IMG/VR virus record: IMGVR_UViG_3300010938_000951
Span: 202,900 to 266,899 of that record
Direction: 5' to 3' (one strand)
DNA: 64,000 nt
Part shown: positions 9,122 through 57,208 of the stretch, piece after piece
Layout of the letters: the number at the start of each line of letters is the position of its first letter
Numbering within the stretch: position 1 is the stretch's first letter
Translations under genes and position numbers: made by a program
Notes under the pieces: model-generated
The model's database searches: none
Told to the model about the DNA's origin: nothing
What the model saw: only the letters and a program-made list of their open reading frames with translations

Positions 9122-9243
9122 TGTAAGACCCACACCGTATTCCCTGGCACAGTACACGCAGTCTATCCTTAGATTGAAAATTCCCCTGAGATTGGGTAAG
9201 ATGTACACACGTGTTACAATACACAACCATATCAGGAGGTCAT

Positions 9244-23038: not shown

Positions 23039-23503
23039 ATGCCAAAATTTAATATAGATTACTCAGGTTTGGCCAATCAGATTACAAAGAGGGCTTATCG
23101 TCTTTCTGATGTAAAAGATCAGTTAGAAACTGTGGCTTTTGATGTGGTTAGATTTAAGGATGGCGACAAGGGTGCTGAACTTTGGCAAGTTCAAAGCGCA
23201 GATGATGGAGATTACATCGTTGCCTTATATGATGAAGAAGAGGTTGAAAAAACTGCTTCTGCTAATCCTTGGGGCGTTTACGTTTCTAAGAATGGACATG
23301 ATTTACAAGTTTCTTACAAGGGAGATCCTCTTGTAAGATTTGCTGCTTCCAAGCTTGGAATTCCAAGTTCAGAGCTACATAAGGCTGAACAGTACCTACC
23401 AGAAAAGCTTGCCACAAATAAGAAGCTCGTCAAAGCACTTTTGAGTGAGCTAAGTGAAACAGCTAGACTAGAGGTATCCAAGAGATACCCGGAACTGGTA
23501 TAA
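23039..23503 (+). CDS. hypothetical protein, first gene of the head module
   Basis: GGGAG RBS; contains VEKTAS motif. Confidence 0.75.
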   Translation: MPKFNIDYSGLANQITKRAYRLSDVKDQLETVAFDVVRFKDGDKGAELWQVQSADDGDYIVALYDEEEVEKTASANPWGVYVSKNGHDLQVSYKGDPLVRFAASKLGIPSSELHKAEQYLPEKLATNKKLVKALLSELSETARLEVSKRYPELV

Positions 23504-23518
23504 TAGAATAGGTGTTCA

Positions 23519-25117
23519 ATGAGCCTTGATAAAATACATCAACTAGTAGGTACCTTAGCTAAAGCAGTAGATGACAATCAGAAGATTGCCACTCCAATTT
23601 TAGCTGCCAAATTAGCAAGATATGTTGAAGCCTATCCTCAAGATAAAACCATCGGCGCAATGTCTCGTGTTATCGACAAGATGGCTAGCAACAATACAAA
23701 CTTTATTCGTAAAGCAGAACTAAAGTCCCTTTACGCAAAACTGTATCAGCATGGCACAAAATTTGCTGAGTTATTTACAGATGAGCTAGGCGAAACAGCC
23801 GAGCCAGAAATTACTACTTATCAACGTGATGAGGCTGTCAAAGCTGTTGATTACCGTGCAGGCGATCAGGTTTTGGCTAATGCATTGGAAAGCGTATTTG
23901 ATAAACATGCTCCGCTTAAGATGTATTCACAGCCGGTAGCTGAAAAAGCTATGAGATCCGTAGGTACTACCTTGGACGCTTGGAACTTGAAACCATCTCA
24001 TTTAACTGTTAGTGATGGTAATGACAAATTTATTGTTATTAAAGCTGATTATGAAACTCCAAAAGGAGTTACATCTTTCTACGTCCCAGTAGAAGTAAAT
24101 AAAAATGATGTGGTTGAACCTCAGGTTTTTATGGGCAATACTGGTCCAGAAGATTTGAATCATACAACTATTAAGGCTTATCTAAGACAACAAGCAGGCA
24201 CCAAAACTAAGATTGGAGCTACTGATATTCTAACTGCATTGACACATGCAACTAGCAGTAAGCGTGAAATTTCTGCGGCTGAATTAGCTGTTACCAGAAT
24301 GAATGCAGAGCGTGCTGGTCAATCAGAATTTTTCCAAGGACAAGTTGTTGGGTTGAAAGTAGAAGCCGCTCCAAAGAGCGATGTTTCTCTTCCTAAGTCT
24401 GATGAATTTGTGTCTTTTGAAGATAAGTTTACTACTCCACAAGGGCTTGCTTCTTGGAGATTTGGTGCTGAAAAAGTAGGTACTGCTAAGGCGCATATCT
24501 CTCGTGAACTACAATCCATGGGATTTGCAAATCACCAAGTAGTTATCACTGGCAATGATGAAAATACCATTTTCTGTGGCGTTTCTCTAGATACTGGTAA
24601 AGTTGCTTTTACTGTTCCAGTAAAAGTTGCTAATAACAAGCTACAAAAACCAACTATTATGTTATGTAATGGTTCTATTGCTACATTTGATAGAAAAGGT
24701 ATTAATAGCTTAGTTTCTGAAAATAAAACAGATGTTAAAGTTGCTGCTGTAGCTTCTAATATGGCATCTCTCAAGCCAAGCGAAGTTGTTAATAATTTAC
24801 GTCAGGCTTTGGCAGAAGAAAATTATGCAAAGGCAGAAGATGCTCTCAATGTATTAGCTAATGCTGGTGATGAGAAGGCATATGCACTTGCGTTCCAGTT
24901 ATATATGACAGGGTTAGCTGGTGTCAAAACTGCTGAAACTAAGTGCTCTAAGATGATTAAGAGCGCTAATAGTGAATATCCGATCTGTTCGCATACGGGG
25001 CTACCTGTCAACAAGGTATACCAAGATAAGAATGGATATTGTCGCCCATTATATCGTAAAGGTATGGACGAGACTTACGAGGGAGCTTCCTTTATTAACG
25101 CCAAGATTTTCGGGTGA
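23519..25117 (+). CDS. hypothetical putative virion protein
   Basis: 532-aa ORF with C-terminal Cys/His cluster and KxA motifs. Confidence 0.75.
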   Translation: MSLDKIHQLVGTLAKAVDDNQKIATPILAAKLARYVEAYPQDKTIGAMSRVIDKMASNNTNFIRKAELKSLYAKLYQHGTKFAELFTDELGETAEPEITTYQRDEAVKAVDYRAGDQVLANALESVFDKHAPLKMYSQPVAEKAMRSVGTTLDAWNLKPSHLTVSDGNDKFIVIKADYETPKGVTSFYVPVEVNKNDVVEPQVFMGNTGPEDLNHTTIKAYLRQQAGTKTKIGATDILTALTHATSSKREISAAELAVTRMNAERAGQSEFFQGQVVGLKVEAAPKSDVSLPKSDEFVSFEDKFTTPQGLASWRFGAEKVGTAKAHISRELQSMGFANHQVVITGNDENTIFCGVSLDTGKVAFTVPVKVANNKLQKPTIMLCNGSIATFDRKGINSLVSENKTDVKVAAVASNMASLKPSEVVNNLRQALAEENYAKAEDALNVLANAGDEKAYALAFQLYMTGLAGVKTAETKCSKMIKSANSEYPICSHTGLPVNKVYQDKNGYCRPLYRKGMDETYEGASFINAKIFG

Positions 25118-25120
25118 CCC

Positions 25121-25948
25121 ATGAGTGTAATTAGGTTGGCAGACCTCTTAGCGCATAAATATGAGCTGGCGTCTGAGGGAGCCGCCTCATTGCAGAGCGT
25201 CATGCGTGATGTTGAGACTAAGATAAAAGACGCTTACAGAAATTATATTGACCTTAAGACTATTACGTCTAAAGCGTACAATGCTATTCCTATTATGGCT
25301 CATCAGGGCGAGCCACATAGTCAAAAAATAGTAGGTCATATGCAGATTATTACTGCAAATATTAATGACCTTATCAAGCATCCCGCACGTTTATTTAAAG
25401 CTATTAATAAAGTTTTAGCTCTAATTTCTTCTTTAGACGAAGCCATTAAGAATACTAAAAAGAAGTCACCAGAGCATTTACCAACTCAACAAGTTCTTAA
25501 CGCTACATTAAGTGATTTAAGTAGACTAGAAAATTCATTAAAAAGGTTCTCTTCATTAATGGTAGGCGCTGCTAAATTACTTAAGCCATTTGTTCCGCCT
25601 GACGAAGAAGGTAAAGGCGCAGAACTTGAAGGTGATGTAGTTGTACCAGAAGCTTTACCATTAACTAAGAATGAAAGAAGACAATTCTTTTTAATGTATC
25701 CAAATGAAGCTGCAGCTTATGGATTTACTGGACCATCTTTGATCGACAATCTAGATATTGTTCTTCAGATTTTGGAAGAGCCCGGAATGTCTAAAGAATT
25801 TGATAAATTTGTTAGAGCAATCAAGCAACAAGAGATACCTAGAAATGGTGCTTTAATTAAGGGATTAGCTGATAAAATTAGACAATTAATAGAGCGCAGA
25901 CAGACTAATGTTTCTGCATTAGAGAACAAACCAACTTTTGAGGAATAA
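25121..25948 (+). CDS. hypothetical helical protein
   Basis: ORF in operon. Confidence 0.7.
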   Translation: MSVIRLADLLAHKYELASEGAASLQSVMRDVETKIKDAYRNYIDLKTITSKAYNAIPIMAHQGEPHSQKIVGHMQIITANINDLIKHPARLFKAINKVLALISSLDEAIKNTKKKSPEHLPTQQVLNATLSDLSRLENSLKRFSSLMVGAAKLLKPFVPPDEEGKGAELEGDVVVPEALPLTKNERRQFFLMYPNEAAAYGFTGPSLIDNLDIVLQILEEPGMSKEFDKFVRAIKQQEIPRNGALIKGLADKIRQLIERRQTNVSALENKPTFEE

Positions 25949-25959
25949 GAGGCTACACT

Positions 25960-26673
25960 ATGAGAATTTCTGAACTATTGAATGCAATGGCTTCTTGGCT
26001 AGAAAGCCCAAACAACGAAGCTCTGTTGCTTGCTGAAGCTGATGAAAAGTGCATGCAAGTAGTAGCAGAATCTTGTGTTCTAGCTGCTGCTCTGTTAAAG
26101 AAGGCGGCTGATGAAGTGGATGTTCTTGAGCCACCAAGCGCTTCTGCAATTACTCCAGAGTCAGTAGAAGAGACTGCTGCTTTAGCGCAAGCTTTAGATG
26201 AGTCCGGTGATCCACAACTTAAGAGAGTTGCGTCTGTATTAGATGAGCTTCTTTTAACTATTGCTGCCCCACCAAATGCTTACGCTGAGCGTAAAGATTT
26301 AGTCGATTCAAGAGCAGAAGAAATTAGAAAAAAGTATGAAGGGCCTCGCAAAGATTTGCACAAATATAACCAAATTGAGAAATCAGAAAAGGCCATTGAG
26401 AACAGTGGTTTTACCAAAGAATATAAAATTCTAGAAGCCCCTCTCAGTTCACGTTACTGCCCAGACCATCCAGGTGCGCAAATTGCACGTGTAGGCGAGC
26501 ACGTATGGCAATGTGAGCTTGATAAAAAAACTTACAATTTTGAAACTGGTTTTGAATTAGCTAATGGCTCAAAGGTTCCTGGTGGAGATGTATCACAACA
26601 AACTAATGGCTTAGATACTCCATTCCATGCAATCTTTGATACACGTGAGGGAAGACTGGGCTATAACAAGTGA
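25960..26673 (+). CDS. hypothetical protein with C-terminal Zn-ribbon-like motif
   Basis: CPDH...WQC; carries the shared ALDESG..ASVLD helix motif. Confidence 0.72.
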   Translation: MRISELLNAMASWLESPNNEALLLAEADEKCMQVVAESCVLAAALLKKAADEVDVLEPPSASAITPESVEETAALAQALDESGDPQLKRVASVLDELLLTIAAPPNAYAERKDLVDSRAEEIRKKYEGPRKDLHKYNQIEKSEKAIENSGFTKEYKILEAPLSSRYCPDHPGAQIARVGEHVWQCELDKKTYNFETGFELANGSKVPGGDVSQQTNGLDTPFHAIFDTREGRLGYNK

Positions 26674-26822
26674 TTGACCAAGAAATTGAAAACTTCACAA
26701 AGGTCATAAGAGAGGTTTTGTTACAGTTAGATCCGGAGGCGGCTCGGCTTTTCTTAGACCGTTTCACGGAGAAATTGAATGAACAAAAACGCACTCAAAA
26801 AAATTCTGGAACATCCAGATAA
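26670..26822 (+). CDS. 50-aa mini-protein paralogous to the C-terminus of 26779..27537 (not in ORF track)
   Basis: GTG overlaps upstream TGA (GTGA); translation VIDQEIENFTKVIREVLLQLDPEAARLFLDRFTEKLNEQKRTQKNSGTSR. Confidence 0.7.
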   Translation: MIDQEIENFTKVIREVLLQLDPEAARLFLDRFTEKLNEQKRTQKNSGTSR

Positions 26823-27537
26823 AGATGAGATTATTGCTAAATTAGTTTTGGATTATCCTCCAAAAGATATTCATGAATGGCTTGCTGGCAAATATACAAA
26901 TGTCAGTGAAGCTAAATTTGTTGTTGCTGAAAAATCAATTAAAGTATTCAAAGATAACTATCTAGACGTCTATTCCATGATCCGAGAAGACATGATGAAG
27001 ACGAAACAAGCTGTGGCTACCAGCACAGAAGAACAGCTTGAATTAGCTGTTAAAAACAACTCTACTTATAAGAGTAAGATGTTAGAATTAGCTGGTAAAG
27101 AAATAGATGTACGTCAAATGGTTGCCCATTTGTGCATTGCTATCGAAACGCGCTTAGGTCAAGTATTTGATGAAATTCAAGAGGACCCACGCAATATCAA
27201 TACAAAGATTGATCGTGTTTTGATTGAGTATGGTGAGTTATTAGGGGGCCTTTTGGAAAAATACTATAAATTCACAGAGAACCCGGCAGATATGGTTATC
27301 CAGCACAACGTGACTTTGCAGGCTGTGGATCAGCATATTTCGGTATTTCATGATGTAATCCGAGATGTTTTGTCTCAATTAGATTTGGAAAGCTCTATGT
27401 TATTTATGGAACTTTTTCAAGCTAAAATGGCTAAGCTAAAGGCTCCAACTCAGGAAAAACCTCTAAATACGGACATGAAATTAGCCGAAGCCAAGCTACT
27501 TAATGAAACAATTAACCAAAAGTTAAACAATCAATAA
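26779..27537 (+). CDS. helical protein with N-terminal HTH-like segment (possible terminase small subunit, unproven)
   Basis: GGAG RBS; N-terminal KILEHPDKDEIIAKL...DIHEWL, then coiled helices. Confidence 0.55.
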   Translation: MNKNALKKILEHPDKDEIIAKLVLDYPPKDIHEWLAGKYTNVSEAKFVVAEKSIKVFKDNYLDVYSMIREDMMKTKQAVATSTEEQLELAVKNNSTYKSKMLELAGKEIDVRQMVAHLCIAIETRLGQVFDEIQEDPRNINTKIDRVLIEYGELLGGLLEKYYKFTENPADMVIQHNVTLQAVDQHISVFHDVIRDVLSQLDLESSMLFMELFQAKMAKLKAPTQEKPLNTDMKLAEAKLLNETINQKLNNQ

Positions 27538-29375
27538 TGCCAGAAAATAAACCTTCTAAAACTCCAATTATCGATATGCCTTCCAAAAAGCAATTGGCAA
27601 AGGTTATTGGACCTTATTCTGATAAAGAATTAGAGCTTACTCCAGAAATGGAAGAGAAGATGAAGAAGCTTATGGAGTTTTTTGATTTCTATGGAATAGA
27701 TTATAGTAAATTCAAACCAGAGTTTCTGTCATTTATAACAGATAAGAAGGCTTATCCTAATTATGATCAGTATCAATATATTGCCGGCCAACATGATTTA
27801 AAAAAATGGATGTATGCTCTGAAAGATATCCACTACAAACAAAAAGCGGGATTCCCATATCGTGAGGCTATTAAACGAGCAACTCAAGGTTGGGCGAAGA
27901 TGGAAATTTATGATTTCCTAAATTGGCTAAGGTTTTACGAAGAAGGGGCTCACATGAAATATAAGTTTGCACAAGTCTGGTATGAAAATGGTCAGCCAGG
28001 TTACTTCTTACATATAAAGCCAGATGCTCCTAAGGAGCCAGCACCTCATTACGATGCTAATGCTGTCAATGACGCTCGTGAAGAGGCAGAGCGCAGAGAA
28101 GAAAAAAGACAGCTTATTGAAAAACAACGTTCTAAGATTATAGGACGTTTGGATTCTGCGGAAAAACTTTTGCGCTCTCAAGAGGGTCAAGAGTTTGCTG
28201 GTAAAGAGTTAGAAAATTTGATGGAAGCTATTTACACTCTTAAAAAGAAAGTGCAGCTTGTTAATAAACTTAGCGTCTCTACTCGTTTGTATGAAGACAT
28301 GATCGTTCGTGAAGGAAATGTTCTTAAGCGTAATGGTTTTACCAAAGCTGCTGAAGTTTTATATTCTTTGGCTCAAACTCCTGGTGCGTCTGGAGAATCT
28401 GCTCAAGGCACACCAGAGGCTGGTGCTGTTCCACCACCATCCCCACCAGCAGATCCATCAGGAGCAGGTAATCCTGGTGCTCCCGGAGGATTACCAATGC
28501 CACCTCCGCCAGGCGCCCCAAATATACAGACCCCTGTGGGTGGTGACCAAAATGATCCCCCTCAACCAAAAGGCATTAAAGAATTCATTGATAATATGAA
28601 TGAGGGCAATAAGACAGATGCTTCAGAATCTGATGATGAATTAGAAGTAGAAGATTCTGAAGATACATTAATGGTAACAGAAGCTCAAGCTGTTGCGCCT
28701 GTAACTCCACCGCCTCCCCCGGCCGCATTGGAAGATGTTCCAATGACAGACGCCCCTCCACCAGATAGAAATCCTCCCGCATTCGTCCCAGAGGCTACCC
28801 CTAAAGAACCAACCAAAACAGAAGAAGAGCCATTAGAAGTAACTGAAGAAGATTTGCCACCACCAGGCGGAGATACTCCTTCTGGCGGCGCTGGTGCCAG
28901 CATAGATAGTAAAATCGATAGTGCATTTCAAAATGTAACAATGGAAGAAATTGTATCTGAATTGGAAGATATCTCTACATATTTTAAAGTGCGTGAGATA
29001 CCAAGACGTTTAGCACGTTTAGATATGATGTTTGATGCTAAGGGAATTTCAGCTTATTTCCCAAGTTTAGCTGAAGCTCAAAACAGAGCTTTGGATGCTA
29101 ACAACTATATTGCTACTCGTATTGATGATATTCTAGCCAAAGTACGTGGAGCTATGGCTACATCTGATATCGCCACCAAATTAAAAACAGATCAAGAAAA
29201 AGAAAAACAGCGCAAACAGATGAGAAAAGAGCAAGAAAATGCTGAACTTGAGGGAGCAACTCCAACAGAAAAAGAAACGCCAACAGTAGAATTAGGTGAG
29301 CTAGGAACTCCTCCGGCTCCTCCAGCAGCCCCAGCAGCTCCTCCAGCGGCCCCACCAAGACCACCAGCAGTCTAA
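27537..29375 (+). CDS. Pro-rich putative head protein
   Basis: 612 aa; Pro/acidic linkers, KxA motifs and shared helix motif. Confidence 0.72.
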   Translation: MPENKPSKTPIIDMPSKKQLAKVIGPYSDKELELTPEMEEKMKKLMEFFDFYGIDYSKFKPEFLSFITDKKAYPNYDQYQYIAGQHDLKKWMYALKDIHYKQKAGFPYREAIKRATQGWAKMEIYDFLNWLRFYEEGAHMKYKFAQVWYENGQPGYFLHIKPDAPKEPAPHYDANAVNDAREEAERREEKRQLIEKQRSKIIGRLDSAEKLLRSQEGQEFAGKELENLMEAIYTLKKKVQLVNKLSVSTRLYEDMIVREGNVLKRNGFTKAAEVLYSLAQTPGASGESAQGTPEAGAVPPPSPPADPSGAGNPGAPGGLPMPPPPGAPNIQTPVGGDQNDPPQPKGIKEFIDNMNEGNKTDASESDDELEVEDSEDTLMVTEAQAVAPVTPPPPPAALEDVPMTDAPPPDRNPPAFVPEATPKEPTKTEEEPLEVTEEDLPPPGGDTPSGGAGASIDSKIDSAFQNVTMEEIVSELEDISTYFKVREIPRRLARLDMMFDAKGISAYFPSLAEAQNRALDANNYIATRIDDILAKVRGAMATSDIATKLKTDQEKEKQRKQMRKEQENAELEGATPTEKETPTVELGELGTPPAPPAAPAAPPAAPPRPPAV

Positions 29376-29383
29376 GGAGATAA

Positions 29384-30154
29384 ATGAAACTCCGTGAACT
29401 GCTTCAAGAAATGAAGAGAGTCCAGGTAAATATAGGCGCATCTACGCCGTATATTTGCGGAGGTACGCCCAGAGATAAATACATGGGCAAATTAGAAAAT
29501 ATTGCAGACATAGATATGACTACTGGAGATAAAACTGTAGACTATCTATCTCAAGAATTTTATTTAACATTACGTAAAAGGTATAACGTTACTAGAAAAA
29601 CTATGGATGATGGACATAGTACGATTTTCATTGGCAGTTTGAAAATTGATTTCTCTTCAAATTTTATTGTACCAAATATTGATCAAGAGCTGGCAAAATT
29701 AGGAATTACTAAACCAACAGATATGCAACGCGAAATGTTTAGTCGTGATTTTACTTGCAACTCATTATTGCTTACTACAGATTTAAAACAAGTTTTAGAC
29801 CCAACCAAAAGAGGATTCAAAGATATTAAAGATAAGAAAATACGTACTTGTTTATCACCAGAAATTACATTAACATCTAATAGAAATAGGGTGGTAAGGG
29901 CTATTTATTTAGCTTGTAAATTGGATTTCGATATAGACGATTCAATTATAGATTTTGTGCGCCAACATCCAGATTCTGTAAAAATCTCAACTGAGAAATC
30001 TATGAATGATAAGTTGAATGAAGCGTTCTCTAGAAATCCAGAGAAGGCTGCAGCACTTATTACACAAATGAATCTCTGGAGCTATATTCCAATTACAGAA
30101 AAAGTTTATCCATATTATATAAAACAAATTAAAGGTAAAACTAATGTCGGTTAA
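29384..30154 (+). CDS. class II (CCA/poly(A) polymerase family) nucleotidyltransferase, head/neck only, atypical templating motif
   Basis: GGTPRD, DIDMTT, SRDFTCNSL, DPTKRGFKDI, SNRNRVVRAIYL; AAGGAG RBS. Confidence 0.85.
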   Translation: MKLRELLQEMKRVQVNIGASTPYICGGTPRDKYMGKLENIADIDMTTGDKTVDYLSQEFYLTLRKRYNVTRKTMDDGHSTIFIGSLKIDFSSNFIVPNIDQELAKLGITKPTDMQREMFSRDFTCNSLLLTTDLKQVLDPTKRGFKDIKDKKIRTCLSPEITLTSNRNRVVRAIYLACKLDFDIDDSIIDFVRQHPDSVKISTEKSMNDKLNEAFSRNPEKAAALITQMNLWSYIPITEKVYPYYIKQIKGKTNVG

Positions 30155-30896
30155 TAAGCAAGCCTATTTTCAGGGTGGTGGCGGTGTAAATGAGCCAAAA
30201 CCAAAGAAGAAGAAATATAAATCTGATCCTGCTATTGTAGTTCAGCCAAGGTTCAAAGAGCCGTTTTATCGCAATTACGATTTATACAATGTTCCGGGCG
30301 AGCACGGCCCAGGCGCCGGTTGGCACGACATGAAAAAGTATAAATCGGTTTCAGAATTTCTAAAAGCCAAAAGAAAGAAGCTGAAGGACAAGTACAAAGC
30401 CGACGACTCTTGGATTTTGGATGATAATTCAAAAACGAAGAAAAATCCAAATATTGAAGCTCGTGCCGCCGTTTTTGAGGAAATTATTAAAAACGCTATC
30501 GATTTTCCAATTGATGATCAGATTGATGAGGGGTTGGGCGGACCATTTGAGACAGATACTGTTAATGATAATCCAGTAGGATATGCTAATTTAACAGGCG
30601 GAAAATTAGATGAATATTTGCCAAAAAATGATTTTGAAGGTAAATTACCAACTAATTTAGATTTTGGTAGGGACTATGTTGAGAGGCAAGAGCCTGGTCG
30701 TGGGCTATTAGATGATATTATTGAAAAACTTTTCAATAAGTATTTACCAGCATCGGAAACAGATTTATTTGGATTACCAGATGGTATTGAACCAAATTCT
30801 GATTTAGATGCAGAACAGACAATGGATGTAGAAGAGCCATTTACTGGAACATCCGATATTGGCACTGATATGTATAAGGATAATTGGATCGTCTAA
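30144..30896 (+). CDS. acidic hypothetical head-module protein
   Basis: N-terminal NKQAYFQGGGGVNEP motif shared with the scaffold. Confidence 0.75.
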   Translation: MSVNKQAYFQGGGGVNEPKPKKKKYKSDPAIVVQPRFKEPFYRNYDLYNVPGEHGPGAGWHDMKKYKSVSEFLKAKRKKLKDKYKADDSWILDDNSKTKKNPNIEARAAVFEEIIKNAIDFPIDDQIDEGLGGPFETDTVNDNPVGYANLTGGKLDEYLPKNDFEGKLPTNLDFGRDYVERQEPGRGLLDDIIEKLFNKYLPASETDLFGLPDGIEPNSDLDAEQTMDVEEPFTGTSDIGTDMYKDNWIV

Positions 30897-30914
30897 AACC
30901 AATCATTATCATTG

Positions 30915-30930
30915 CATACAACCGCATATT
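30915..30930 (+). promoter_or_regulatory. candidate late-promoter motif MATA-N6-YATWWY
   Basis: CATAcaaccgCATATT; similar elements at 37078, 53808, 55106, 55159, 58493, 60449 and 61603, all intergenic. Confidence 0.4.
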
Positions 30931-30963
30931 ATCATATAAAGAAAGCACTCTAGAGGTACCTAA

Positions 30964-32040
30964 ATGACTTTACAATCGACAGCACAACAGCTATACGTCA
31001 TAGACCCGGTTTCCCCAGCGTCACAACTACCAGCTCATGACGAACATTCAGTTATAGCTATACCTCCACACCTACACCATGGTGGCGAGGAAGAGCTTAT
31101 GAGTGGGCCTATTGAAGTGTCCGAGCCGGGGGAAATTGAAATTCTTATAGAAGACATTCCAGGCGCTCCTCCAGGAACTAAGGATCCAGAAATTGAAGTT
31201 GTTGATGAATCATTGCAAGTTGAAGATAACAATGAAGCAAAAAAGGAAACCGAAAAAGACGAAAAGGGTAGTAAATGGAATTGGTCAAAGCACGGTCCAC
31301 ATGGCTTTGTAGCTTGGGTCAAGGAAAGACTTGATTCTGTTCCAAAACACTCAGGATACGATTCTGCCGGACTAGAGCGCGCCATGGCTTACATGGAAAA
31401 ATTAGACAATGAAATTTCTAAGGCCATGAGAATGGATCTTGATTCTGAATTAGACGCCAATCAGGTCGAGAAGATTCGCTCTCAATTAGATGAAGGTTTA
31501 GCTCGTTTGCGTGATCGTCTTGATAAGGTTAAAGAATCCAAAAAGTCTTCTCGTAAAAAGAAGAAGACCGCTGCCGATTTGAAGTCTCAAATTGACAAAG
31601 TGCTTGAAAAATATGCAGATGAAGATTTACAAGCATGGGTAGAGGATACTGGTGTTCCAGGCGAAGAATGGAGCGCAGAAAAAGTAATTGTACAACTCGC
31701 TAATGAAGGCTTTGAACCTGGTTTTGAAGGCACTAACATCGTTAAAGAGGCTCAAAAAATTACTGGTGTGCAAGGTGTTTATGTAACCGTTCCTCTTTTA
31801 ATCTCTAGGGTGGCTCGTGTTTGCATTAATGGTACTGTATCTGCGGGACATGATATTGAAGATTTATACAGACGCCAAGTAGCTAAGTATAAATTAGATG
31901 ATCGTGAGCAGGCTGAAGTAAGACAATTACTATGGGATATGGGCTATCCACTTCGTGAAGACCGTGGATTCTTCCCAGAAGATGACCTAGAAGTATACGA
32001 TACTGATAACATGGATTGGGCAGCTAACTACAGGGCATAA
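30964..32040 (+). CDS. hypothetical head-module protein
   Basis: GAGG RBS; IVKEAQ and KKTAA motifs. Confidence 0.75.
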   Translation: MTLQSTAQQLYVIDPVSPASQLPAHDEHSVIAIPPHLHHGGEEELMSGPIEVSEPGEIEILIEDIPGAPPGTKDPEIEVVDESLQVEDNNEAKKETEKDEKGSKWNWSKHGPHGFVAWVKERLDSVPKHSGYDSAGLERAMAYMEKLDNEISKAMRMDLDSELDANQVEKIRSQLDEGLARLRDRLDKVKESKKSSRKKKKTAADLKSQIDKVLEKYADEDLQAWVEDTGVPGEEWSAEKVIVQLANEGFEPGFEGTNIVKEAQKITGVQGVYVTVPLLISRVARVCINGTVSAGHDIEDLYRRQVAKYKLDDREQAEVRQLLWDMGYPLREDRGFFPEDDLEVYDTDNMDWAANYRA

Positions 32041-32041
32041 T

Positions 32042-32674
32042 ATGGTTAAAAATTCTAGACACCAAGGTGTCATTAGTAGACAATCTGATGAATCTTATAG
32101 CGAAGATCATTGGTTGAAGGAGTTTGAAAACAAACTTCAAAAAACCAGCGTACAGCCTCGTGGTCATAGCCTATTTGATCAGATTAGCTCCATCATGAAT
32201 ACTAAATCCAAATATCCATCAGTACAAGCTGCAGTTGATGATATGATGCAGCGCAGTGGATTAACAGCTTATTTGGATAATGTTAAAACATCTACAGAAG
32301 AAACTTCAGGCAAACCAAAGAAAACCGCTCAATTAAAAGAAGACTCTAAAATTCCTGATGTAATTAAAGCTAAACCAAGCATCAAACACACTCTAGAGAA
32401 TATTATCAGGGAAACAAGAGGAAATATTCCAGTTCCAGCTATAATTAGTCGTTTGCGAGCCCTTCATGCGGCTGATATTAGTGATGAAAGTGCTTGGGAA
32501 GATGAGAAACTCATTCGTTTAGTTAGCAGTTGTAATCTACAAGCCAAGAAGGACAATCCTGGAAACTATGATCATTTTGATGATCTAGGTAGAGGAGACC
32601 ATTCTACTGCTGATTCTGATATTGATGCGTCCAATACTGATGCATTTAACGCTTTAATGCCTGCAAAAATTTAA
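32042..32674 (+). CDS. hypothetical head-module protein
   Basis: ORF in operon; KKTAQ motif. Confidence 0.75.
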   Translation: MVKNSRHQGVISRQSDESYSEDHWLKEFENKLQKTSVQPRGHSLFDQISSIMNTKSKYPSVQAAVDDMMQRSGLTAYLDNVKTSTEETSGKPKKTAQLKEDSKIPDVIKAKPSIKHTLENIIRETRGNIPVPAIISRLRALHAADISDESAWEDEKLIRLVSSCNLQAKKDNPGNYDHFDDLGRGDHSTADSDIDASNTDAFNALMPAKI

Positions 32675-32685
32675 GTGCTTTGCAC

Positions 32686-33192
32686 TTACCCAGCCTGTTT
32701 TTGAGTATTTCTAGTGGGCCTAATTACTATTTCAGGCTTATCATGTGGACAATATCCAAAAAATCCTTTAGCACAGTTGCAATTATAGCATAATAATTGA
32801 TATTCTTCTTTAGGAAAGTTATTTTTAATTAGCCAACGGTATAATTTACCACCAGATTTCTTACCATTTTGTCGTCGATCTTCTGCACCATCATTATTTA
32901 TGTGATCAATAGTTAGAAATTCTAAGGTAGTTTCCCCACAACAAGTGCATTTGCCACCATAGGCTTCTATAATTTTTTGTTTAACACTAAGATCATAAAC
33001 TCTTTGTTGTTCTCTTATTATTTCTTTTCTATTTGTATATCTTCTTTTGCTATATTCTTTACAACAAAAGATACACATATATTTAGCCTGTTTAATATCG
33101 GAAGGTCTAGTATTATCTTTAGTTAGGCTTTTGAAGCATACAGTGCAGCTTTTGCCTTCAAAACTATATTGTCGTTTTTTCTTATCTGTCAT
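32686..33192 (-). CDS. free-standing HNH (His-Me finger) endonuclease
   Basis: N-terminal CTVC/CIFC Zn finger; CTCCG...LTIDHINNDG...LLCYNCNCAK HNH core; antisense to its neighbours. Confidence 0.88.
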   Translation of the reverse strand: MTDKKKRQYSFEGKSCTVCFKSLTKDNTRPSDIKQAKYMCIFCCKEYSKRRYTNRKEIIREQQRVYDLSVKQKIIEAYGGKCTCCGETTLEFLTIDHINNDGAEDRRQNGKKSGGKLYRWLIKNNFPKEEYQLLCYNCNCAKGFFGYCPHDKPEIVIRPTRNTQKQAG

Positions 33193-33214
33193 GGGTATAT
33201 TTCAGAATATATCC

Positions 33215-35092
33215 ATGAACAATGATACTTATAAAGAAATGTTTTATAGGTTTAAGGATAAGCTAGCTAATCTTGATCCGGTAGAATTTTGCCAGAAACA
33301 TTTAACACTTGAAGGAGAGCCATTTTCTCTCGTAGGCAACGGGTATAAACCTTTCAGCGATATCTATAGATACATTGGAATTAAGGCATTAGAAAAAGAT
33401 TCTAAACCAGTTATTCTAGTAAAGGGACGTCAGGTAGGTGCTACTACCATGGCAAGCGCCCTTGAAATGTATTTCATGGGCTCTGGTTTATTTGGAGATG
33501 GATTCCGTCCACCAATTCGTGTTATTCATGCTTTTCCTCAATTAGAATTAGCGGCAGCTTATTCAAAAACTAAACTCAATCAAATGATTTCTCAGGCTAA
33601 AATCCCTGAGGGAGCCGTAGAAAATAAAGCATCTCGTCCAAAGTCTTTCATGCAGCAATTGCTTGATACTACGACTGCTACTAATGACTCTTTACATTTT
33701 AAACAATTCTTGGGCGGAAATCACTTGTGGATTGAATCTACTGGTGTAGATGCCGACAGAATCATGGGTCGTACCGCTGATATCATATTTTTTGACGAGG
33801 TACAGAAAACTACCAGTGTAGCTATTGGAAACGCGCTTAAAATTTTAACCAACGCCAAATATGGTAAGCCAACTAAAGGCGTACAAGTATTTTTTGGAAC
33901 GCCACGTCGTAAGGGATCTGATTATCATAAGATGTGGCAATCATCATCTCAGCAGTATTATTATCTTGGATGCGAAAAATGCGAAAAGCATTTTCCTCTT
34001 TATACTCCAGGTTCTGATGATTGGGAAAAAGTTTGGATTCACGGTATGATTGTTAAATGTACCCATTGTGGTCATGAACAAGATAAACTACAAGCACAAG
34101 AACGTGGTAAGTGGGTTCCGCTAAAAGATCCAAACGATCCAGATTGCGCAATGGTTGGGTTTCATATTAACCAACTTTACATGCCAAAATTTACACGAGA
34201 AGATATTGAAAAAGAAAAGCCTGGTAAACATCCGATCAACACAGAGCGCGTTTTTCAAAATGAGGTTCTTGGAGAGTTTTATCAAGGTGATGCTACCCCA
34301 ATGTCTCCAGAAGACATTCGTGTAAATTGTGCCGATTTCGAAAGAAAATTTAGCCCTCGTATTTTGCCAGCTAAAGGTGTAACGCAACAATTAACTGTAC
34401 TTGGAATCGACTACGGTGCACGTTCAGATTTGGAACAACTAGCAGACCCAGAAAGAGTAAGACCAGCAGGACAATCTTATAGTACAGCAGTTGTATTACA
34501 AACAAAAGGCCCAAGTATACTATCAATTGAGTTTGCTACCAAATTTAAACGAAATGACATAGAAAGCAAAAAAGGTATAATTGATCAGTTGATGAGACAG
34601 TACAGTATACAATTGGCTATTGGAGACATTGGTTATTCTAATGACTTCTCATCTCTATTGCATAATACATACGGAGATAGATACTTAGTGTCTCGTGCTC
34701 ATAATAAAGTTAATGAGCATGTTAAGTTCAATCATGAAGCTTTTCCAAAAGAAATTGTTTTTGAAAGAGATTTTTATATTAGTGAACTTTACGATCAAAT
34801 GAAAAAAGGATTAGTTAGGTTTCCATATGGCGATTATGAGAAAATCGCATGGCTTATTGATCATTGTTGTAGTATGGAATTAAAACCATCTATTTCTAAA
34901 TATGGAGATCATACAGTACATTATGTTAAAGGCGGCACTCCAAACGATGGATTTATGGCATTATTAAATGCTTATTTGGCCTATAAATTCCTGGTAAGTC
35001 GAGGGTTTACAAATAATAATCCAACATTACACAATACTAAAAACTTGACGAAACCTATGGTAATTACTGGCTATGTACCTAGGAAGTTCTAA
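33215..35092 (+). CDS. terL: terminase large subunit (GpA-like, with Zn finger)
   Basis: Walker A VKGRQVGATT, Walker B FFDEVQ, coupling GTP, CEKC...CTHC, nuclease GIDYG; start at ATG 33191 or 33215 rather than 33047. Confidence 0.9.
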   Translation: MNNDTYKEMFYRFKDKLANLDPVEFCQKHLTLEGEPFSLVGNGYKPFSDIYRYIGIKALEKDSKPVILVKGRQVGATTMASALEMYFMGSGLFGDGFRPPIRVIHAFPQLELAAAYSKTKLNQMISQAKIPEGAVENKASRPKSFMQQLLDTTTATNDSLHFKQFLGGNHLWIESTGVDADRIMGRTADIIFFDEVQKTTSVAIGNALKILTNAKYGKPTKGVQVFFGTPRRKGSDYHKMWQSSSQQYYYLGCEKCEKHFPLYTPGSDDWEKVWIHGMIVKCTHCGHEQDKLQAQERGKWVPLKDPNDPDCAMVGFHINQLYMPKFTREDIEKEKPGKHPINTERVFQNEVLGEFYQGDATPMSPEDIRVNCADFERKFSPRILPAKGVTQQLTVLGIDYGARSDLEQLADPERVRPAGQSYSTAVVLQTKGPSILSIEFATKFKRNDIESKKGIIDQLMRQYSIQLAIGDIGYSNDFSSLLHNTYGDRYLVSRAHNKVNEHVKFNHEAFPKEIVFERDFYISELYDQMKKGLVRFPYGDYEKIAWLIDHCCSMELKPSISKYGDHTVHYVKGGTPNDGFMALLNAYLAYKFLVSRGFTNNNPTLHNTKNLTKPMVITGYVPRKF

Positions 35093-35169: not shown

Positions 35170-37044
35170 ATGGCTGGTATTAAAAAATCGGGATTAGGAG
35201 ATCATCCGTCCTTTTCAGCAAAGTTCTTACAGGGCAGATCCACCACCCCTCAAGTAAGTGCTATTATGGCTCAGGGTGTTTCTGGAGAAAGAAGAGTTAT
35301 TCTTTCAGACGAAGTAGACCAAGGATATTTTAGAGACGGTTCTGGGCCAAGTTTAAATAAAATGGCACTAAATTCTCCCACAAGTGCTTCAAATGTAGTC
35401 TCTTCAGTGGGTTTCAAGAAAAATGCTCAAGTAGTTTCTTCAGTTGGAGGAATGTTTCGTGGTATTCATGGAGATTCCGTTAAGCAAACTCCTGAAGTAT
35501 ATTCCCCTCTTTGGCTTAATAGTAATCTAAACCTTCCCAGGGACCGTGCAACAATCAATGCATGGTGTCGTAGCTTTTTTGCTTTAAATCCATTTGTACA
35601 CAATGCTATTAGTTTACATAGCACTTATCCTATTAGCAAGCTTTCTATTAAATGTCCAAACAAAGATATTGAAAAATTCTTTGATGATATGATTGAAGAA
35701 ATTGATTTAATGAATATTTGCGTACAAATTGCCCAAGAATATTGGCTTTTAGGAGAAGCATTTGTTTATGCAGAATTAGATGAAGGTAAAGGCAAGTGGA
35801 GTCGCCTACACATTCAGAATCCAGATTTTATGCTTGTCAAACGTACGGTTGTAGCAAGCGAACCAATCATCATGCTTCGTCCTGATGAAAACCTCAAAAA
35901 AATTATTTTCTCAAATCGTCCAACTGATATTGAACAACGTAAACAATTAAATCAACACATCATTGATTCTGTTAGACGTGGTGAAAATATTCCACTAGAC
36001 AATTTCCACGTATCACATTTGGCTCGTCGTATTAGTCCATACGAAATCAGAGGCACAGGATTACCTGTTTGTATTTTCCGTCAGTTAATGTTATTCGACA
36101 AATTGCGTGAATCTAAATATGCACAGTCTGATAATATGATCAATCCATTGACTTTGGTTAAGATTGGTTCGGCTGATTATAAGCCAACTTTTGCTGACCT
36201 AGAAGCTTGGAGAAGTGTATTTGAAGAAGCGCAGTACGATAAAGACTTTAAGATATTTACCCATGAAGGAGTAGCGGTTGAAAGAGTAGGTTGGGGACAG
36301 GGAATCTATGATATCTCTGGAGATATTACTCAGCTACTTAAAGAAATTTTTATTGGGTTATTCGTACCACCTGTTATGATGGATGGTGGCGATACTACCA
36401 CTTATGCTAATGCTGGTGTAGCTTTGGACGTTCTTCGTCAGAGGTACATGCAGTTCCGTAACATGATGTCCATTTGGTTAAAGAATAAGATTTTTGCTCC
36501 AATCTCCAAAATTCAAGGGTTTTATGACTACTCTGGTGGAGAGAAACAACTTATTGTTCCTGAAATTGATTGGAATCACATGTCATTATTTGATGCTGGA
36601 GATTATATCAATAGTTTAATGACATTATCTCAAGGACAAGCGGATCAAAAGAGAGTATCTATTCATACTCTTTATCGTTCATTGGGTCTTGAGTACGAAG
36701 ATGAAGTACGTAAAATGCGTAAAGAAAATATTCAAAATGCAATTGCTAAGAAAGAAATTGCCGCGTTAGATCAAATGGATCTAAATGCTCTTCGTGCTTT
36801 GGATGATGAGGATGAAATTCCAGAACCAAAACAACCGGGTGCTGGACAAGAACAACCAGTACCAGGAGAGATGCCAGGAGGAGCACCGGGTGGATTACCA
36901 GATTTGGGTCTACCAGGCGGTGGCCCTCCACCACCTCCACCACCAGGTGGCGGTGGACCTCCACCACCACCTCCTCCGCCACCAGAAGGCGGTCCACCAG
37001 GCGGTGGACCTCCAGCAGGCGGAGCACCTCCACCAGCTCCATAA
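35170..37044 (+). CDS. portal protein with N-terminal extension and poly-Pro/Gly C-terminal tail
   Basis: Directly follows terminase; NAWCRSFFALNPFVHNAISLHSTYP, YWLLGEAFVY and HLARRISPYEIRG portal-like segments. Confidence 0.8.
   Translation: MAGIKKSGLGDHPSFSAKFLQGRSTTPQVSAIMAQGVSGERRVILSDEVDQGYFRDGSGPSLNKMALNSPTSASNVVSSVGFKKNAQVVSSVGGMFRGIHGDSVKQTPEVYSPLWLNSNLNLPRDRATINAWCRSFFALNPFVHNAISLHSTYPISKLSIKCPNKDIEKFFDDMIEEIDLMNICVQIAQEYWLLGEAFVYAELDEGKGKWSRLHIQNPDFMLVKRTVVASEPIIMLRPDENLKKIIFSNRPTDIEQRKQLNQHIIDSVRRGENIPLDNFHVSHLARRISPYEIRGTGLPVCIFRQLMLFDKLRESKYAQSDNMINPLTLVKIGSADYKPTFADLEAWRSVFEEAQYDKDFKIFTHEGVAVERVGWGQGIYDISGDITQLLKEIFIGLFVPPVMMDGGDTTTYANAGVALDVLRQRYMQFRNMMSIWLKNKIFAPISKIQGFYDYSGGEKQLIVPEIDWNHMSLFDAGDYINSLMTLSQGQADQKRVSIHTLYRSLGLEYEDEVRKMRKENIQNAIAKKEIAALDQMDLNALRALDDEDEIPEPKQPGAGQEQPVPGEMPGGAPGGLPDLGLPGGGPPPPPPPGGGGPPPPPPPPPEGGPPGGGPPAGGAPPPAP
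36901..37041 (+). repeat. poly-proline/glycine low-complexity tract
   Basis: CCA/CCT repeats encoding GGPPPPPPPGGGGPPPPPPPPPEGG. Confidence 0.9.
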
Positions 37045-57171: not shown

Positions 57172-57208
57172 AAAGCCTCCTAGAGAAATCTAGGAGGCTT
57201 TTTTATTT
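57172..57208. terminator. bidirectional intrinsic terminator between MCP and convergent CCA gene
   Basis: AAAGCCTCCTAGA-GAAA-TCTAGGAGGCTTT followed by TTTATTT. Confidence 0.9.

What the first reader, a model, noticed from the sequence alone, without database searches (positions are those of the whole stretch)
29384..30154. Head-cluster nucleotidyltransferase with a rewired base-templating pocket
The catalytic GG..RD/DxD and RDFT.N motifs are intact. However, the class II amino-acid template RF.EDxxR reads TLTSNRNR (E to S, D to N, R kept), RRD becomes SRD, and RxxRF becomes RAIYL. The 256-aa protein also lacks the tRNA-measuring body/tail. Established: the Asp/Arg of EDxxR read the Watson-Crick edge of CTP/ATP, and engineered changes there shift specificity toward U/G. 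A canonical CCA enzyme with intact EDGLR is encoded separately at 57208, so this copy is free to do something else. Inference: a novel RNA-tailing (U/G or mixed) or protein/nucleotide-modifying enzyme co-expressed with virion genes and possibly delivered at infection.
Basis: partly seen in the sequence, partly recalled or inferred. Interest (0 to 1): 0.8.

Follow-up and report, generated by a model that had tools for sequence, protein, structure and literature searches.

The report
Minimal CCA-type nucleotidyltransferase, megaphage core gene
A roughly 490-kb phage, and every relative examined, carries a stripped-down copy of the enzyme that normally rebuilds the CCA end of tRNA: it keeps the catalytic machinery, lacks the tRNA-measuring half, has a naturally altered nucleotide-selecting pocket, and is paired with a disordered partner protein, so it is probably an RNA-end tailing enzyme of unknown specificity rather than an ordinary CCA enzyme.

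Summary
ORF 29384-30154(+) encodes a 256-aa class II nucleotidyltransferase made of head and neck only (Pfam PF01743; AF2 pLDDT 95; Foldseek matches the first ~240 residues of CCA-, A- and CC-adding enzymes). All catalytic residues are intact. The template EDxxR reads S-N-R-N-R, RRD reads SRD, and RxxRF reads RAIYL.

- The gene is a core gene. All 80 related phage loci (40-89% identity) keep it in the same gene order just upstream of terminase and portal, and it is nearly as conserved as terminase.
- The full-length CCA enzyme at 57208 is the accessory copy. All 8 related large records carry the short enzyme; only 3 also carry a full-length one.
- The pocket change is derived and coupled. Basal orthologues have D-P-[KR]-R; the crown clade has N-[KR]-N-R.
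- The templating Arg is kept, so a switch to U/G is not implied.
- The downstream disordered protein (30144-30896) is fused to the enzyme in many relatives.
- Basal orthologues are fused to M15 peptidase, tail lysozyme or an RNA-repair HAD domain. This hints at virion delivery but does not show it.

Most likely this is an active RNA 3'-end nucleotidyltransferase that is not tRNA-measuring. Its substrate and NTP preference are untested. It is a new variant of a known kind.

The parts
29384..30154 (+). Short class II nucleotidyltransferase (256 aa), head and neck domains only
   Evidence: ORF. Pfam PF01743 E 4e-12. AF2 pLDDT 95.3. Foldseek to 4wby, 6qy6, 3h39 and 1miv at probability 1.0 over ~240 columns.
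29374..29379 (+). Shine-Dalgarno AAGGAG, overlapping the last two bases of the upstream gene's TAA stop (29373-29375) and 4 nt before the ATG
   Evidence: Read directly from the sequence. It indicates tight operon linkage with the 612-aa upstream gene.
29459..29515 (+). Motif A: G26-G27-T-P-R30-D31 helix turn and the catalytic D42-x-D44
   Evidence: G26, G27, R30 and D42 are invariant and D44 is present in 189 of 190 family members.
29648..29650 (+). D89, the third catalytic carboxylate (aligned to Glu of the A-adding enzyme)
   Evidence: HMMER alignment to 4wby. D in 187 and E in 3 of 190 members.
29741..29761 (+). Motif B: S120-R-D-F-T-C-N126 (canonical RRDFTxN; the first Arg is replaced by Ser throughout the family)
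   Evidence: Alignment. S120 in 186 of 190; R121 in 190; D122 in 189.
29876..29890 (+). Motif D, the nucleotide template position: S165-N166-R167-N168-R169 in place of E-D-x-x-R
   Evidence: Alignment. Invariant N166, N168 and R169 in 121 close homologues. Derived from D-P-[KR]-R in basal orthologues.
29897..29911 (+). Motif E: R172-A-I-Y175-L176 in place of RxxRF
   Evidence: Alignment. R172 in 190 of 190; Y175 in 150 of 190.
30144..30896 (+). Downstream partner (250 aa), largely disordered. It overlaps the NTase stop by 11 nt. It has a conserved AYFQGGGG junction motif, a Lys-rich patch, an NYD.Y / KYKS..EF motif and an acidic tail.
   Evidence: Homologous tails are fused in-frame to the NTase in 15 of the cluster representatives, and a single open reading frame spans both genes at ten or more of the 80 loci. 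ESM Atlas model pTM 0.18. AF2 of the natural fusion L031 gives a tail pLDDT below 50 except a helix at about 310-330.
27537..29375 (+). Upstream 612-aa protein with a Pro-rich low-complexity centre, always immediately 5' of the NTase
   Evidence: Conserved position in every locus that extends far enough upstream, and in the distant contig L005. No family match.
23039..32674 (+). Conserved core block w154-w532-w275-w237-w252-w612-NTase-w250dn-w358-w210 of uncharacterised proteins
   Evidence: Same order in 80 IMG/VR loci at 40-89% NTase identity. Relative conservation is given.
33047..35092 (+). Terminase large subunit (context)
   Evidence: Pfam GpA_ATPase E 8e-14.
35170..37044 (+). Portal protein (context)
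   Evidence: phrog_16240 portal E 3e-49.
57208..58452 (-). Canonical full-length CCA-adding enzyme (accessory paralogue)
   Evidence: Pfam head, RNA-binding and tRNA_NucTran2_2 domains. NCBIfam NF009814 at 319 bits against a cut-off of 290. EDGLR, RRD and RxxRF motifs.

Best explanation

Shown:
- It has the complete two-metal active site and the helix that carries the nucleotide template.
- It lacks the body and tail that dock and measure the tRNA acceptor/T-arm helix.
- It is a vertically inherited core gene of a clade of roughly 350-490-kb phages.
- It is translationally coupled to a disordered, Lys-rich then acidic protein that is fused to it in many relatives.
- Its template evolved once from D-P-[KR]-R to N-[KR]-N-R and was then held fixed.

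Inferred:
- It adds nucleotides to 3'-OH ends of RNA without measuring a tRNA.
- Substrate or partner recruitment is supplied by the disordered tail protein, in the way that the basic C-terminal region serves E. coli PAP I.
- Because the C-to-A switching apparatus of CCA enzymes is missing (the Asp of the template and the BxA motif), it most likely adds one kind of nucleotide, as short tails or single additions, rather than CCA.
- With R169 retained, A or C remains the most likely nucleotide, but this is open.
- Its fixed place in the operon just upstream of terminase and portal, and the fusion of basal orthologues to cell-wall hydrolase domains, make late expression and possible packaging plausible.
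For: - Fold and motifs.
- Core-gene status and synteny: 80 of 80 loci share the order w612-NTase-(w250dn)-w358-w210-TerL-portal.
- Conservation: NTase median identity is 61%, against TerL 70%, w612 40% and w358 43%.
- Distribution: all 8 large related records have it and only 3 have a full-length enzyme.
- Phage specificity: only 3 MAG hits among the representative genomes of 185,579 species, one of them on a 383-kb contig.
- Partner: in-frame fusions to the tail protein occur in many relatives. The tail is disordered apart from one helix.
- Template evolution: D166 with K/R168 in 68 members, N166 with N168 in 77, mixed states in only 9 of 190. The N type forms the crown clade.
- tRNA maturation does not need it: 63 of 65 phage tRNA genes already encode CCA.
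[quoted passage not shown] The BxA motif and flexible loop serve A-addition (PMC2910056). In PAP the Arg, not the Asp, sets specificity (PMC2532741). D and R of the template were irreplaceable for CCA or A repair in vivo (PMC11784652).
Against: - No activity, substrate or expression data exist, and no RNA sequencing run was listed.
- Basal orthologues keep the canonical D...R pair, and one is fused to an RNA-repair HAD domain. A tRNA-end repair role for the whole family therefore cannot be excluded.
- The tail protein's role in RNA binding is a guess from composition. AF2 gives no confident docking.
- The neighbours have no assignable function, so the operon context says little.
- Nothing excludes a non-RNA acceptor.
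Confidence: 0.45

Rival explanations
1. It is a minimal but genuine tRNA 3'-end repair enzyme with CC-, A- or CCA-adding activity. tRNA binding is supplied by the basic tail protein, and the enzyme backs up or complements host and phage CCA enzymes against nucleases that trim acceptor ends.
For: - The nearest solved relatives are all tRNA nucleotidyltransferases.
- The genome invests heavily in translation and RNA repair: 65 tRNAs and at least 3 RNA-ligase-family genes.
- Basal orthologues keep D...R with a variable first position, as in CC-adding enzymes (PMC11784652).
- P0236 fuses the domain to HAD_SAK, an RNA-repair phosphatase family.
- CCA enzymes have a primer-based backup for nucleotide choice (PMC2532741).
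Against: - There is no body or tail to select tRNA.
- In the crown clade, the template Asp that was irreplaceable for A and CCA repair in vivo is Asn (PMC11784652).
- The BxA residues are lost.
- It scores 54 bits against a cut-off of 290 for the CCA equivalog model.
- A repair accessory would be expected to be sporadic, like the full-length copy (3 of 8 records), not universal and syntenic.
Confidence: 0.25
2. It is a virion-packaged effector. The enzyme, with its disordered tail as a packaging or ejection module, is loaded into the head and enters the cell with the DNA. There it tails or repairs RNA at the very start of infection. This concerns location and timing and can be combined with either activity above.
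For: - Its position is fixed directly upstream of TerL, portal and the protease-domain protein.
- Orthologues in the basal branch, in the same synteny (L005), are single ORFs joining the NTase to Peptidase_M15_3 and Phage_lysozyme2 (P0196, P0211). That architecture is typical of virion-associated lysins and of the polyvalent proteins predicted to be packaged (PMC5512222).
- The neighbouring proteins are disordered and low in complexity.
- There is a weak phiKZ internal-head-protein similarity in w275 (E 0.02, below cut-off).
Against: - There are no virion proteomics for any member, because the clade is uncultured.
- The fusions are in distant orthologues (about 35% identity), not in this phage.
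- The whole region from DnaG to portal is collinear core genome, so adjacency is weak evidence.
- The phiKZ_IP hit is not significant.
Confidence: 0.25
3. It acts on a non-RNA acceptor or uses dNTPs: for example tailing DNA ends during packaging or replication, nucleotidylylating a protein, or making or modifying a small nucleotide.
For: - Motif B, which is involved in ribose recognition (PMC2910056), is changed from RRD to SRD in 186 of 190 members.
- The gene lies next to the terminase.
- Pol-beta nucleotidyltransferases in polyvalent proteins have been predicted to modify proteins (PMC5512222).
Against: - The fold and every motif are those of the RNA-tailing class II clade.
- R121 and D122 of motif B are invariant. 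Which Arg contacts the 2'-OH could not be checked here.
- No known class II member has a non-RNA acceptor.
- There is no match to defence or anti-defence families.
Confidence: 0.08
4. It is an inactive structural relic (a pseudoenzyme).
For: Three of the five class II motifs deviate from the consensus.
Against: - All metal ligands and the GG..RD turn, R121, D122, R169 and R172 are invariant or nearly so over 190 sequences down to about 25% identity.
- The deviating residues are themselves fixed.
Confidence: 0.02

Closest known systems
Class II CCA-adding, CC-adding and A-adding tRNA nucleotidyltransferases (e.g. Aquifex aeolicus A-adding enzyme 4wby/1vfg, Planococcus halocryophilus 6qy6, Thermotoga maritima 3h39, Geobacillus 1miv)
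   Same: Same head and neck fold (Foldseek probability 1.0, TM by query 0.6-0.7). It keeps motif A, the third carboxylate, the R-D of motif B, the D..G..D of motif C, the Arg of motif D and the first Arg of motif E.
   Different: - No body or tail.
- The template Asp is Asn, with a coupled change of the residue before the Arg.
- The first Arg of RRD is Ser.
- The BxA residues are lost.
- The loop region is predicted as an ordered helix.
- It fails the NCBIfam CCA equivalog cut-offs.
- It is paired with or fused to a disordered protein instead.
Bacterial poly(A) polymerase I (PcnB; 3aqk/3aql)
   Same: Same catalytic core. PAP does not need the flexible loop, and its specificity rests on the template Arg rather than the Asp (PMC2532741). 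From my own knowledge, PAP uses a basic C-terminal region for RNA binding, which is a possible analogy to the Lys-rich tail protein.
   Different: PcnB has EDxxR and RRD and a folded C-terminal RNA-binding domain (PF12627), which is absent here. It scores 33 bits against a cut-off of 306 for TIGR01942.
Engineered template variants of class II enzymes (Cho, Verlinde and Weiner 2007, as cited in PMC3925840 and PMC2532741)
   Same: It shows that changing the Asp and Arg of motif D re-programmes nucleotide choice.
   Different: Those variants replaced both residues so as to reverse the hydrogen-bond polarity. Here only the Asp is changed (to Asn) and the Arg stays, so the engineered U/G outcome cannot be transferred.
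Polyvalent or virion-delivered phage proteins (PMC5512222) and virion-associated lysins
   Same: Basal orthologues join the NTase to Peptidase_M15 and a tail lysozyme in one ORF next to packaging genes.
   Different: The protein in this window carries no such domain, and packaging is untested.

Membership tests
Class II nucleotidyltransferase superfamily (PolyA_pol head, PF01743) | Profile match above the curated threshold | tested here: met
   47 bits against a cut-off of 23, E 4e-12.
Class II nucleotidyltransferase superfamily (PolyA_pol head, PF01743) | GGxxRD helix turn, DxD and a third carboxylate | tested here: met
   G26, G27, R30, D31, D42, D44 and D89 are present. G26, G27, R30 and D42 are invariant in 190 members; D44 189/190, D89 187/190 (E in 3), D31 172/190.
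Class II nucleotidyltransferase superfamily (PolyA_pol head, PF01743) | Head plus helical neck fold | tested here: met
   AF2 pLDDT 95. Foldseek probability 1.0 to 46 class II chains.
Bona fide class II CCA-adding enzyme | Amino-acid template EDxxR or DDxxR | tested here: not met
   It reads S-N-R-N-R. N166 is invariant in 121 close homologues. The range of natural templates is from PMC11784652.
Bona fide class II CCA-adding enzyme | [quoted passage not shown] | tested here: not met
   256 aa. The model ends after the neck. There is no PF12627 or PF13735 match, unlike the copy at 57208.
Bona fide class II CCA-adding enzyme | DxxRRD motif B and a BxA motif flanking a flexible loop | tested here: not met
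   Motif B reads E-x-x-S-R-D. The aligned BxA positions are F94 and V96/P97. The loop region is predicted as helix 99-105 at pLDDT above 90.
Bona fide class II CCA-adding enzyme | NCBIfam equivalog score | tested here: not met
   54 bits against a cut-off of 290 (NF009814). The canonical paralogue scores 319.
Bona fide class II CCA-adding enzyme | CCA addition to tRNA | not testable with these tools
   This needs an enzyme assay.
Bacterial poly(A) polymerase I (PcnB) | Family model score and C-terminal RNA-binding domain | tested here: not met
   TIGR01942 33 bits against 306. No PF12627 match.
Virion-packaged or polyvalent effector proteins | Fusion to cell-wall hydrolase or other effector domains, encoded with virion genes | tested here: inconclusive
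   Met in the basal orthologues P0196 and P0211, in conserved synteny. Not met in this protein.
Virion-packaged or polyvalent effector proteins | Presence in virions | not testable with these tools
   The clade is uncultured and no proteomics are available.
Known defence or anti-defence nucleotidyltransferases (PADLOC models) | Profile match | tested here: not met
   No PADLOC family at E<=0.01.

The most novel reading that the evidence does not exclude
The whole clade of roughly 400-500-kb phages depends on a packaged, minimal class II polymerase. Its naturally re-programmed template (N-[KR]-N-R) would make it add a nucleotide other than the C/A programme to host or phage RNA 3' ends at the onset of infection. 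That would make it a natural counterpart of the engineered template-swap enzymes and a new host-takeover or RNA-protection mechanism.
Probability: 0.12. Interest if true: 0.85.

Novelty: new variant of a known kind. Interest (0 to 1): 0.58.

Why it matters
Class II CCA-adding enzymes are the textbook case of a protein acting as a template for nucleotide choice. According to a 2025 selection study, natural enzymes vary the template only at its first position, and the Asp and Arg are irreplaceable. This family offers three things.
- A natural series runs from D-P-[KR]-R to N-[KR]-N-R, with a coupled second-site change. It lies on a minimal head-and-neck scaffold that is conserved nearly as strongly as the terminase across a large uncultured megaphage clade.
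- It is a ready-made test of what the catalytic core does without its tRNA ruler, and of how the pocket can be re-tuned in nature.
- It raises the question of why a huge phage that already encodes CCA in its tRNA genes needs such an enzyme as a core function.

If it proves to be packaged or to tail non-tRNA RNAs, it would add a new kind of phage takeover or RNA-protection activity.

Tried and rejected
- Neighbour annotation found nothing significant for the ten block proteins. I tried Pfam at E<=1, PHROGs, NCBIfam, PADLOC and ESM Atlas. The Sel1-like Atlas hits (score 0.75) and the phiKZ_IP hit (E 0.02) are below any usable threshold.
- My visual guess of ParB-like or SLT-like motifs in some C-terminal extensions was not supported by Pfam.
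- P0239, a 7,704-aa prediction with four PolyA_pol heads and Cpn10, looks like a read-through or mis-called gene and was set aside.
- Programmed frameshifting between the NTase and the tail gene was rejected. The unfused genomes have an ordinary overlapping ATG start, and the fused genomes are simply in frame.
- Promoter and terminator scans were at background: 47 against 53.7 expected, and 15 against 11.7.
- Rfam found no RNA family in the window.
- No RNA sequencing run was listed, so expression could not be examined and read laying was not used.
- No RNA-polymerase beta-prime motif was found in the 267-kb record, so the block is not an obvious phage RNAP module.
- AF2 of a natural fusion did not give a confident docked tail.
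- I could not verify from the held papers which Arg of RRD contacts the ribose 2'-OH. The dNTP idea therefore rests only on 'RRD is involved in ribose recognition' (PMC2910056).

Full report
**1. What is there**

The ORF at 29384-30154 (+) is real. It starts 4 nt after an AAGGAG Shine-Dalgarno that overlaps the TAA stop of the upstream 612-aa gene. Its last 11 nt overlap the ATG of the next gene. The three genes therefore form a tightly coupled unit.

The product matches the Pfam PolyA_pol head domain (E 4e-12) and, more weakly, two PHROG 'tRNA nucleotidyltransferase' families.

- GGTPRD and D42-x-D44 (motif A).
- D89, the third carboxylate.
- S-R-D-F-T-C-N on RRDFTxN (motif B).
- D139..G144..D147 (motif C).
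- S-N-R-N-R on E-D-x-x-R (motif D).
- R-A-I-Y-L on R-x-x-R-F (motif E).

An AlphaFold2 model built on 71 homologues is very confident (pLDDT 95.3, pTM 0.90). Foldseek aligns about 240 of its 256 residues to the head and neck of A-adding, CCA-adding and CC-adding enzymes and poly(A) polymerase (probability 1.0; TM 0.6-0.7 by query, 0.36-0.49 by target). The body and tail are absent. [quoted passage not shown]

**2. Where it comes from**

The window is the last 64 kb of a 266,899-base IMG/VR record. That record is in turn the 3' part of a 490,849-base JGI metagenome contig. Related records of 428-473 kb are rated complete, one with direct terminal repeats. This is therefore a megaphage, and the 'provirus' label is probably a trimming artefact.

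The accessible 267 kb carries 65 tRNA genes, and 63 of them already encode CCA. It also carries at least three RNA-ligase-family genes and no RtcB. DNA runs that hold the sequence are soil and groundwater metagenomes. No RNA run was listed.

**3. The family**

At 90% clustering there are 752 homologues, nearly all 247-260 aa, on contigs of up to 496 kb. An exhaustive search of 50%-identity representatives found 199 clusters at E<1e-10. Among the representative genomes of 185,579 prokaryotic species only three MAG contigs carry a relative, one of them a 383-kb contig binned as Chitinophagales. The family is in practice phage-specific.

Across 190 members down to about 25% identity:
- G26, G27, R30, D42, R121 and R172 are invariant.
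- D44, D89, S91, E117, S120, D122, N126, D139, D147 and R169 are kept in at least 186 of 190.

This rules out a decaying pseudoenzyme.

**4. It is a core gene and the canonical CCA enzyme is the accessory one**

In 80 IMG/VR loci with 40-89% NTase identity the gene order is always (DnaG - sigma-like) - w154 - w532 - (w275) - w237 - w252 - w612 - NTase - (tail protein) - w358 - w210 - TerL - portal. The same upstream block is recognisable in a contig whose NTase is only about 35% identical.

The NTase diverges almost in step with the terminase. Its median identity is 61%, against 70% for TerL. In 64 to 70 pairwise comparisons it is more conserved than w612, w358 or w210.

All eight large related records contain the short enzyme. 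Only three also contain a 418-466-aa PolyA_pol enzyme, and complete genomes of 472,749 and 428,320 bases have the short one alone.

The copy at 57208-58452 (-) in this window is a textbook CCA enzyme. It has EDGLR, RRD and RxxRF, the head, RNA-binding and tRNA_NucTran2_2 domains, and an NCBIfam equivalog score of 319 against a cut-off of 290. The short enzyme scores 54 on the same model.

The short enzyme performs the function that the clade cannot do without.

**5. The pocket**

Orthologues at the same syntenic position fall into two states. Basal lineages read x-D-P-[KR]-R, which keeps the canonical Asp...Arg pair but has a variable first position. The crown clade that contains the window reads x-N-[KR]-N-R.

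The two changed positions co-vary. D166 occurs with K/R168 in 68 sequences and N166 with N168 in 77. Mixed states occur in only 9 of 190. The basic residue moves from position 168 to 167.

In the 121 closest sequences N166, N168, R169, R172 and Y175 never vary. The change is therefore derived, coupled and then held under purifying selection. That is the signature of a re-tuned pocket, not a relaxed one.

What the change does cannot be read from sequence.
- PMC11784652 reports that natural A- and CCA-adding enzymes use only EDxxR or DDxxR. CC-adding enzymes vary only at the first position. When all three template positions of the human enzyme were randomised with codons that included Asn and Ser, no replacement of the Asp or the Arg survived selection for A or CCA repair. 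This argues against ordinary A or CCA addition by the crown-clade enzyme.
- PMC2532741 shows that in E. coli poly(A) polymerase D212A stays A-specific, and only loss of the Arg scrambles nucleotide choice. R169 is kept in 188 of 190 members.

That result does not transfer here.

Two further family-wide deviations point away from the CCA programme.
- The first Arg of RRD, a motif involved in ribose recognition (PMC2910056), is Ser in 186 of 190 members.

**6. The partner**

The 250-aa product of 30144-30896 is predicted to be disordered (ESM Atlas model pTM 0.18). From N to C it carries:
- a conserved AYFQGGGG motif at its N-terminus;
- a Lys-rich patch;
- an 'NYD.Y ... KYKS..EF' motif;
- an acidic tail.

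Homologous tails are fused in-frame to the NTase in 15 of the cluster representatives. A single open reading frame also spans both genes at ten or more of the 80 loci. Fused and overlapping-gene arrangements alternate among close relatives, so no frameshift needs to be invoked.

AF2 of a natural 487-aa fusion (L031) reproduces the NTase with confidence. The tail stays below pLDDT 50 except for a helix around residues 310-330, at 76-82.

This repeated fusion and fission is good evidence that the two products act together. That the tail supplies RNA or partner binding is my inference from its composition.

**7. Hints on location**

In the basal D-P-[KR]-R branch the NTase is followed by a Trp-rich linker and then by one of the following:
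- Peptidase_M15_3 (P0211, 29 bits against a cut-off of 23);
- Peptidase_M15 plus phage tail lysozyme (P0196, a single 783-aa ORF without stops, in conserved synteny);
- a HAD domain of the 'Swiss Army Knife' RNA-repair families (P0236).

Cell-wall hydrolase domains on large multidomain phage proteins are typical of virion-associated lysins. They are also typical of the 'polyvalent' proteins predicted to be packaged and injected (PMC5512222). The HAD fusion points instead to RNA-end healing.

In this phage the gene lies 2.9 kb upstream of TerL, 5 kb upstream of the portal gene and 12 kb upstream of a 1,231-aa protein with a prohead-protease domain. However, the entire DnaG-to-portal region is collinear core genome, so adjacency alone is weak evidence. 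Packaging is possible but unproven.

**8. Conclusion**

The most economical reading is as follows. The protein is an active RNA 3'-end nucleotidyltransferase of the class II type. It has lost the tRNA ruler and works with a disordered partner. In the clade that includes this phage it has a re-tuned nucleotide pocket.

I put 0.45 on that mechanism and 0.25 on a minimal tRNA-end repair enzyme. Virion delivery is a compatible add-on at about 0.25. Non-RNA chemistry and a pseudoenzyme get small probabilities.

It should not be filed as a CCA-adding enzyme or as PcnB, because defining features of both were tested and not met. It is a new variant of a known kind.

I rate the interest as moderate to high, mainly for two reasons:
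- It is a natural template variant outside the range described for this well-studied enzyme family.
- It is a core gene of an entire megaphage clade and has no assigned role.

Noticed in passing
G000:C1:176544-176700 (outside the window; same virus record): There are two tRNA genes with a CUA (amber-suppressor) anticodon. TAG ends only 3 of 166 long ORFs in the 267-kb record (TAA 98, TGA 65). This suggests TAG avoidance or partial recoding.
   Followed up: partly
G000:C1:8441-179348 (outside the window): The record has 65 tRNA genes covering all amino acids, and 63 of them encode the 3' CCA. Three have odd anticodon loops.
   Followed up: partly
whole record; window 1-64000: The IMG/VR 'provirus, 62% complete' record is the 3' 267 kb of a 490,849-base contig. 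Relatives are complete at 428-473 kb, one with terminal repeats. The provirus call is probably a trimming artefact of a free megaphage.
   Followed up: partly
window 32686-33192 (-) and TerL 33047-35092 (+); loci L025, L036, L040-L042, L046, L057, L058, L068, L080, L083, L085: A weakly HNH / endonuclease VII-like gene (Pfam E about 0.008-0.009, below both curated cut-offs) sits on the opposite strand abutting the TerL start. In a dozen relatives the TerL match is split into two pieces 0.3-2 kb apart, which suggests an intron, intein or homing-endonuclease insertion.
   Followed up: no
window 30162-30185: The motif A-Y-F-Q-G-G-G-G is conserved at the NTase/tail junction whether the genes are fused or separate. 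It may be a processing site or a docking motif.
   Followed up: no
window 42252-45947: A 1,231-aa protein whose N-terminal ~110 residues match a head-maturation protease PHROG. The rest is unassigned.
   Followed up: no
window 25121-25948: w275 is the least conserved block member (about 27% identity) and is absent from many relatives. It has a sub-threshold similarity to phiKZ internal head proteins (E 0.02).
   Followed up: no
window 23519-25117 and 25960-26673: w532 has an internal repeat ('F.VPV.V.N...P') and a Cys/His-rich C-terminus. w237 also ends in a Cys/His-rich, zinc-ribbon-like segment. Both are strongly conserved core proteins without any family match.
   Followed up: no
window 9211-12756: A DnaE-type DNA polymerase III alpha subunit (PHP, NTPase, finger and HhH domains) is the phage replicase.
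   Followed up: no
P0239 (library protein, not in the window): A 7,704-aa predicted protein with four PolyA_pol head domains and a Cpn10 domain. It is probably a read-through of several genes or a product of another genetic code.
   Followed up: partly
L090:5001-5693 (JAIXLO010000160.1, 383-kb contig): The only long cellular-genome hit is a 383-kb contig binned in a Chitinophagales MAG. It is probably a mis-binned relative of this phage and a possible hint to a Bacteroidota host.
   Followed up: no
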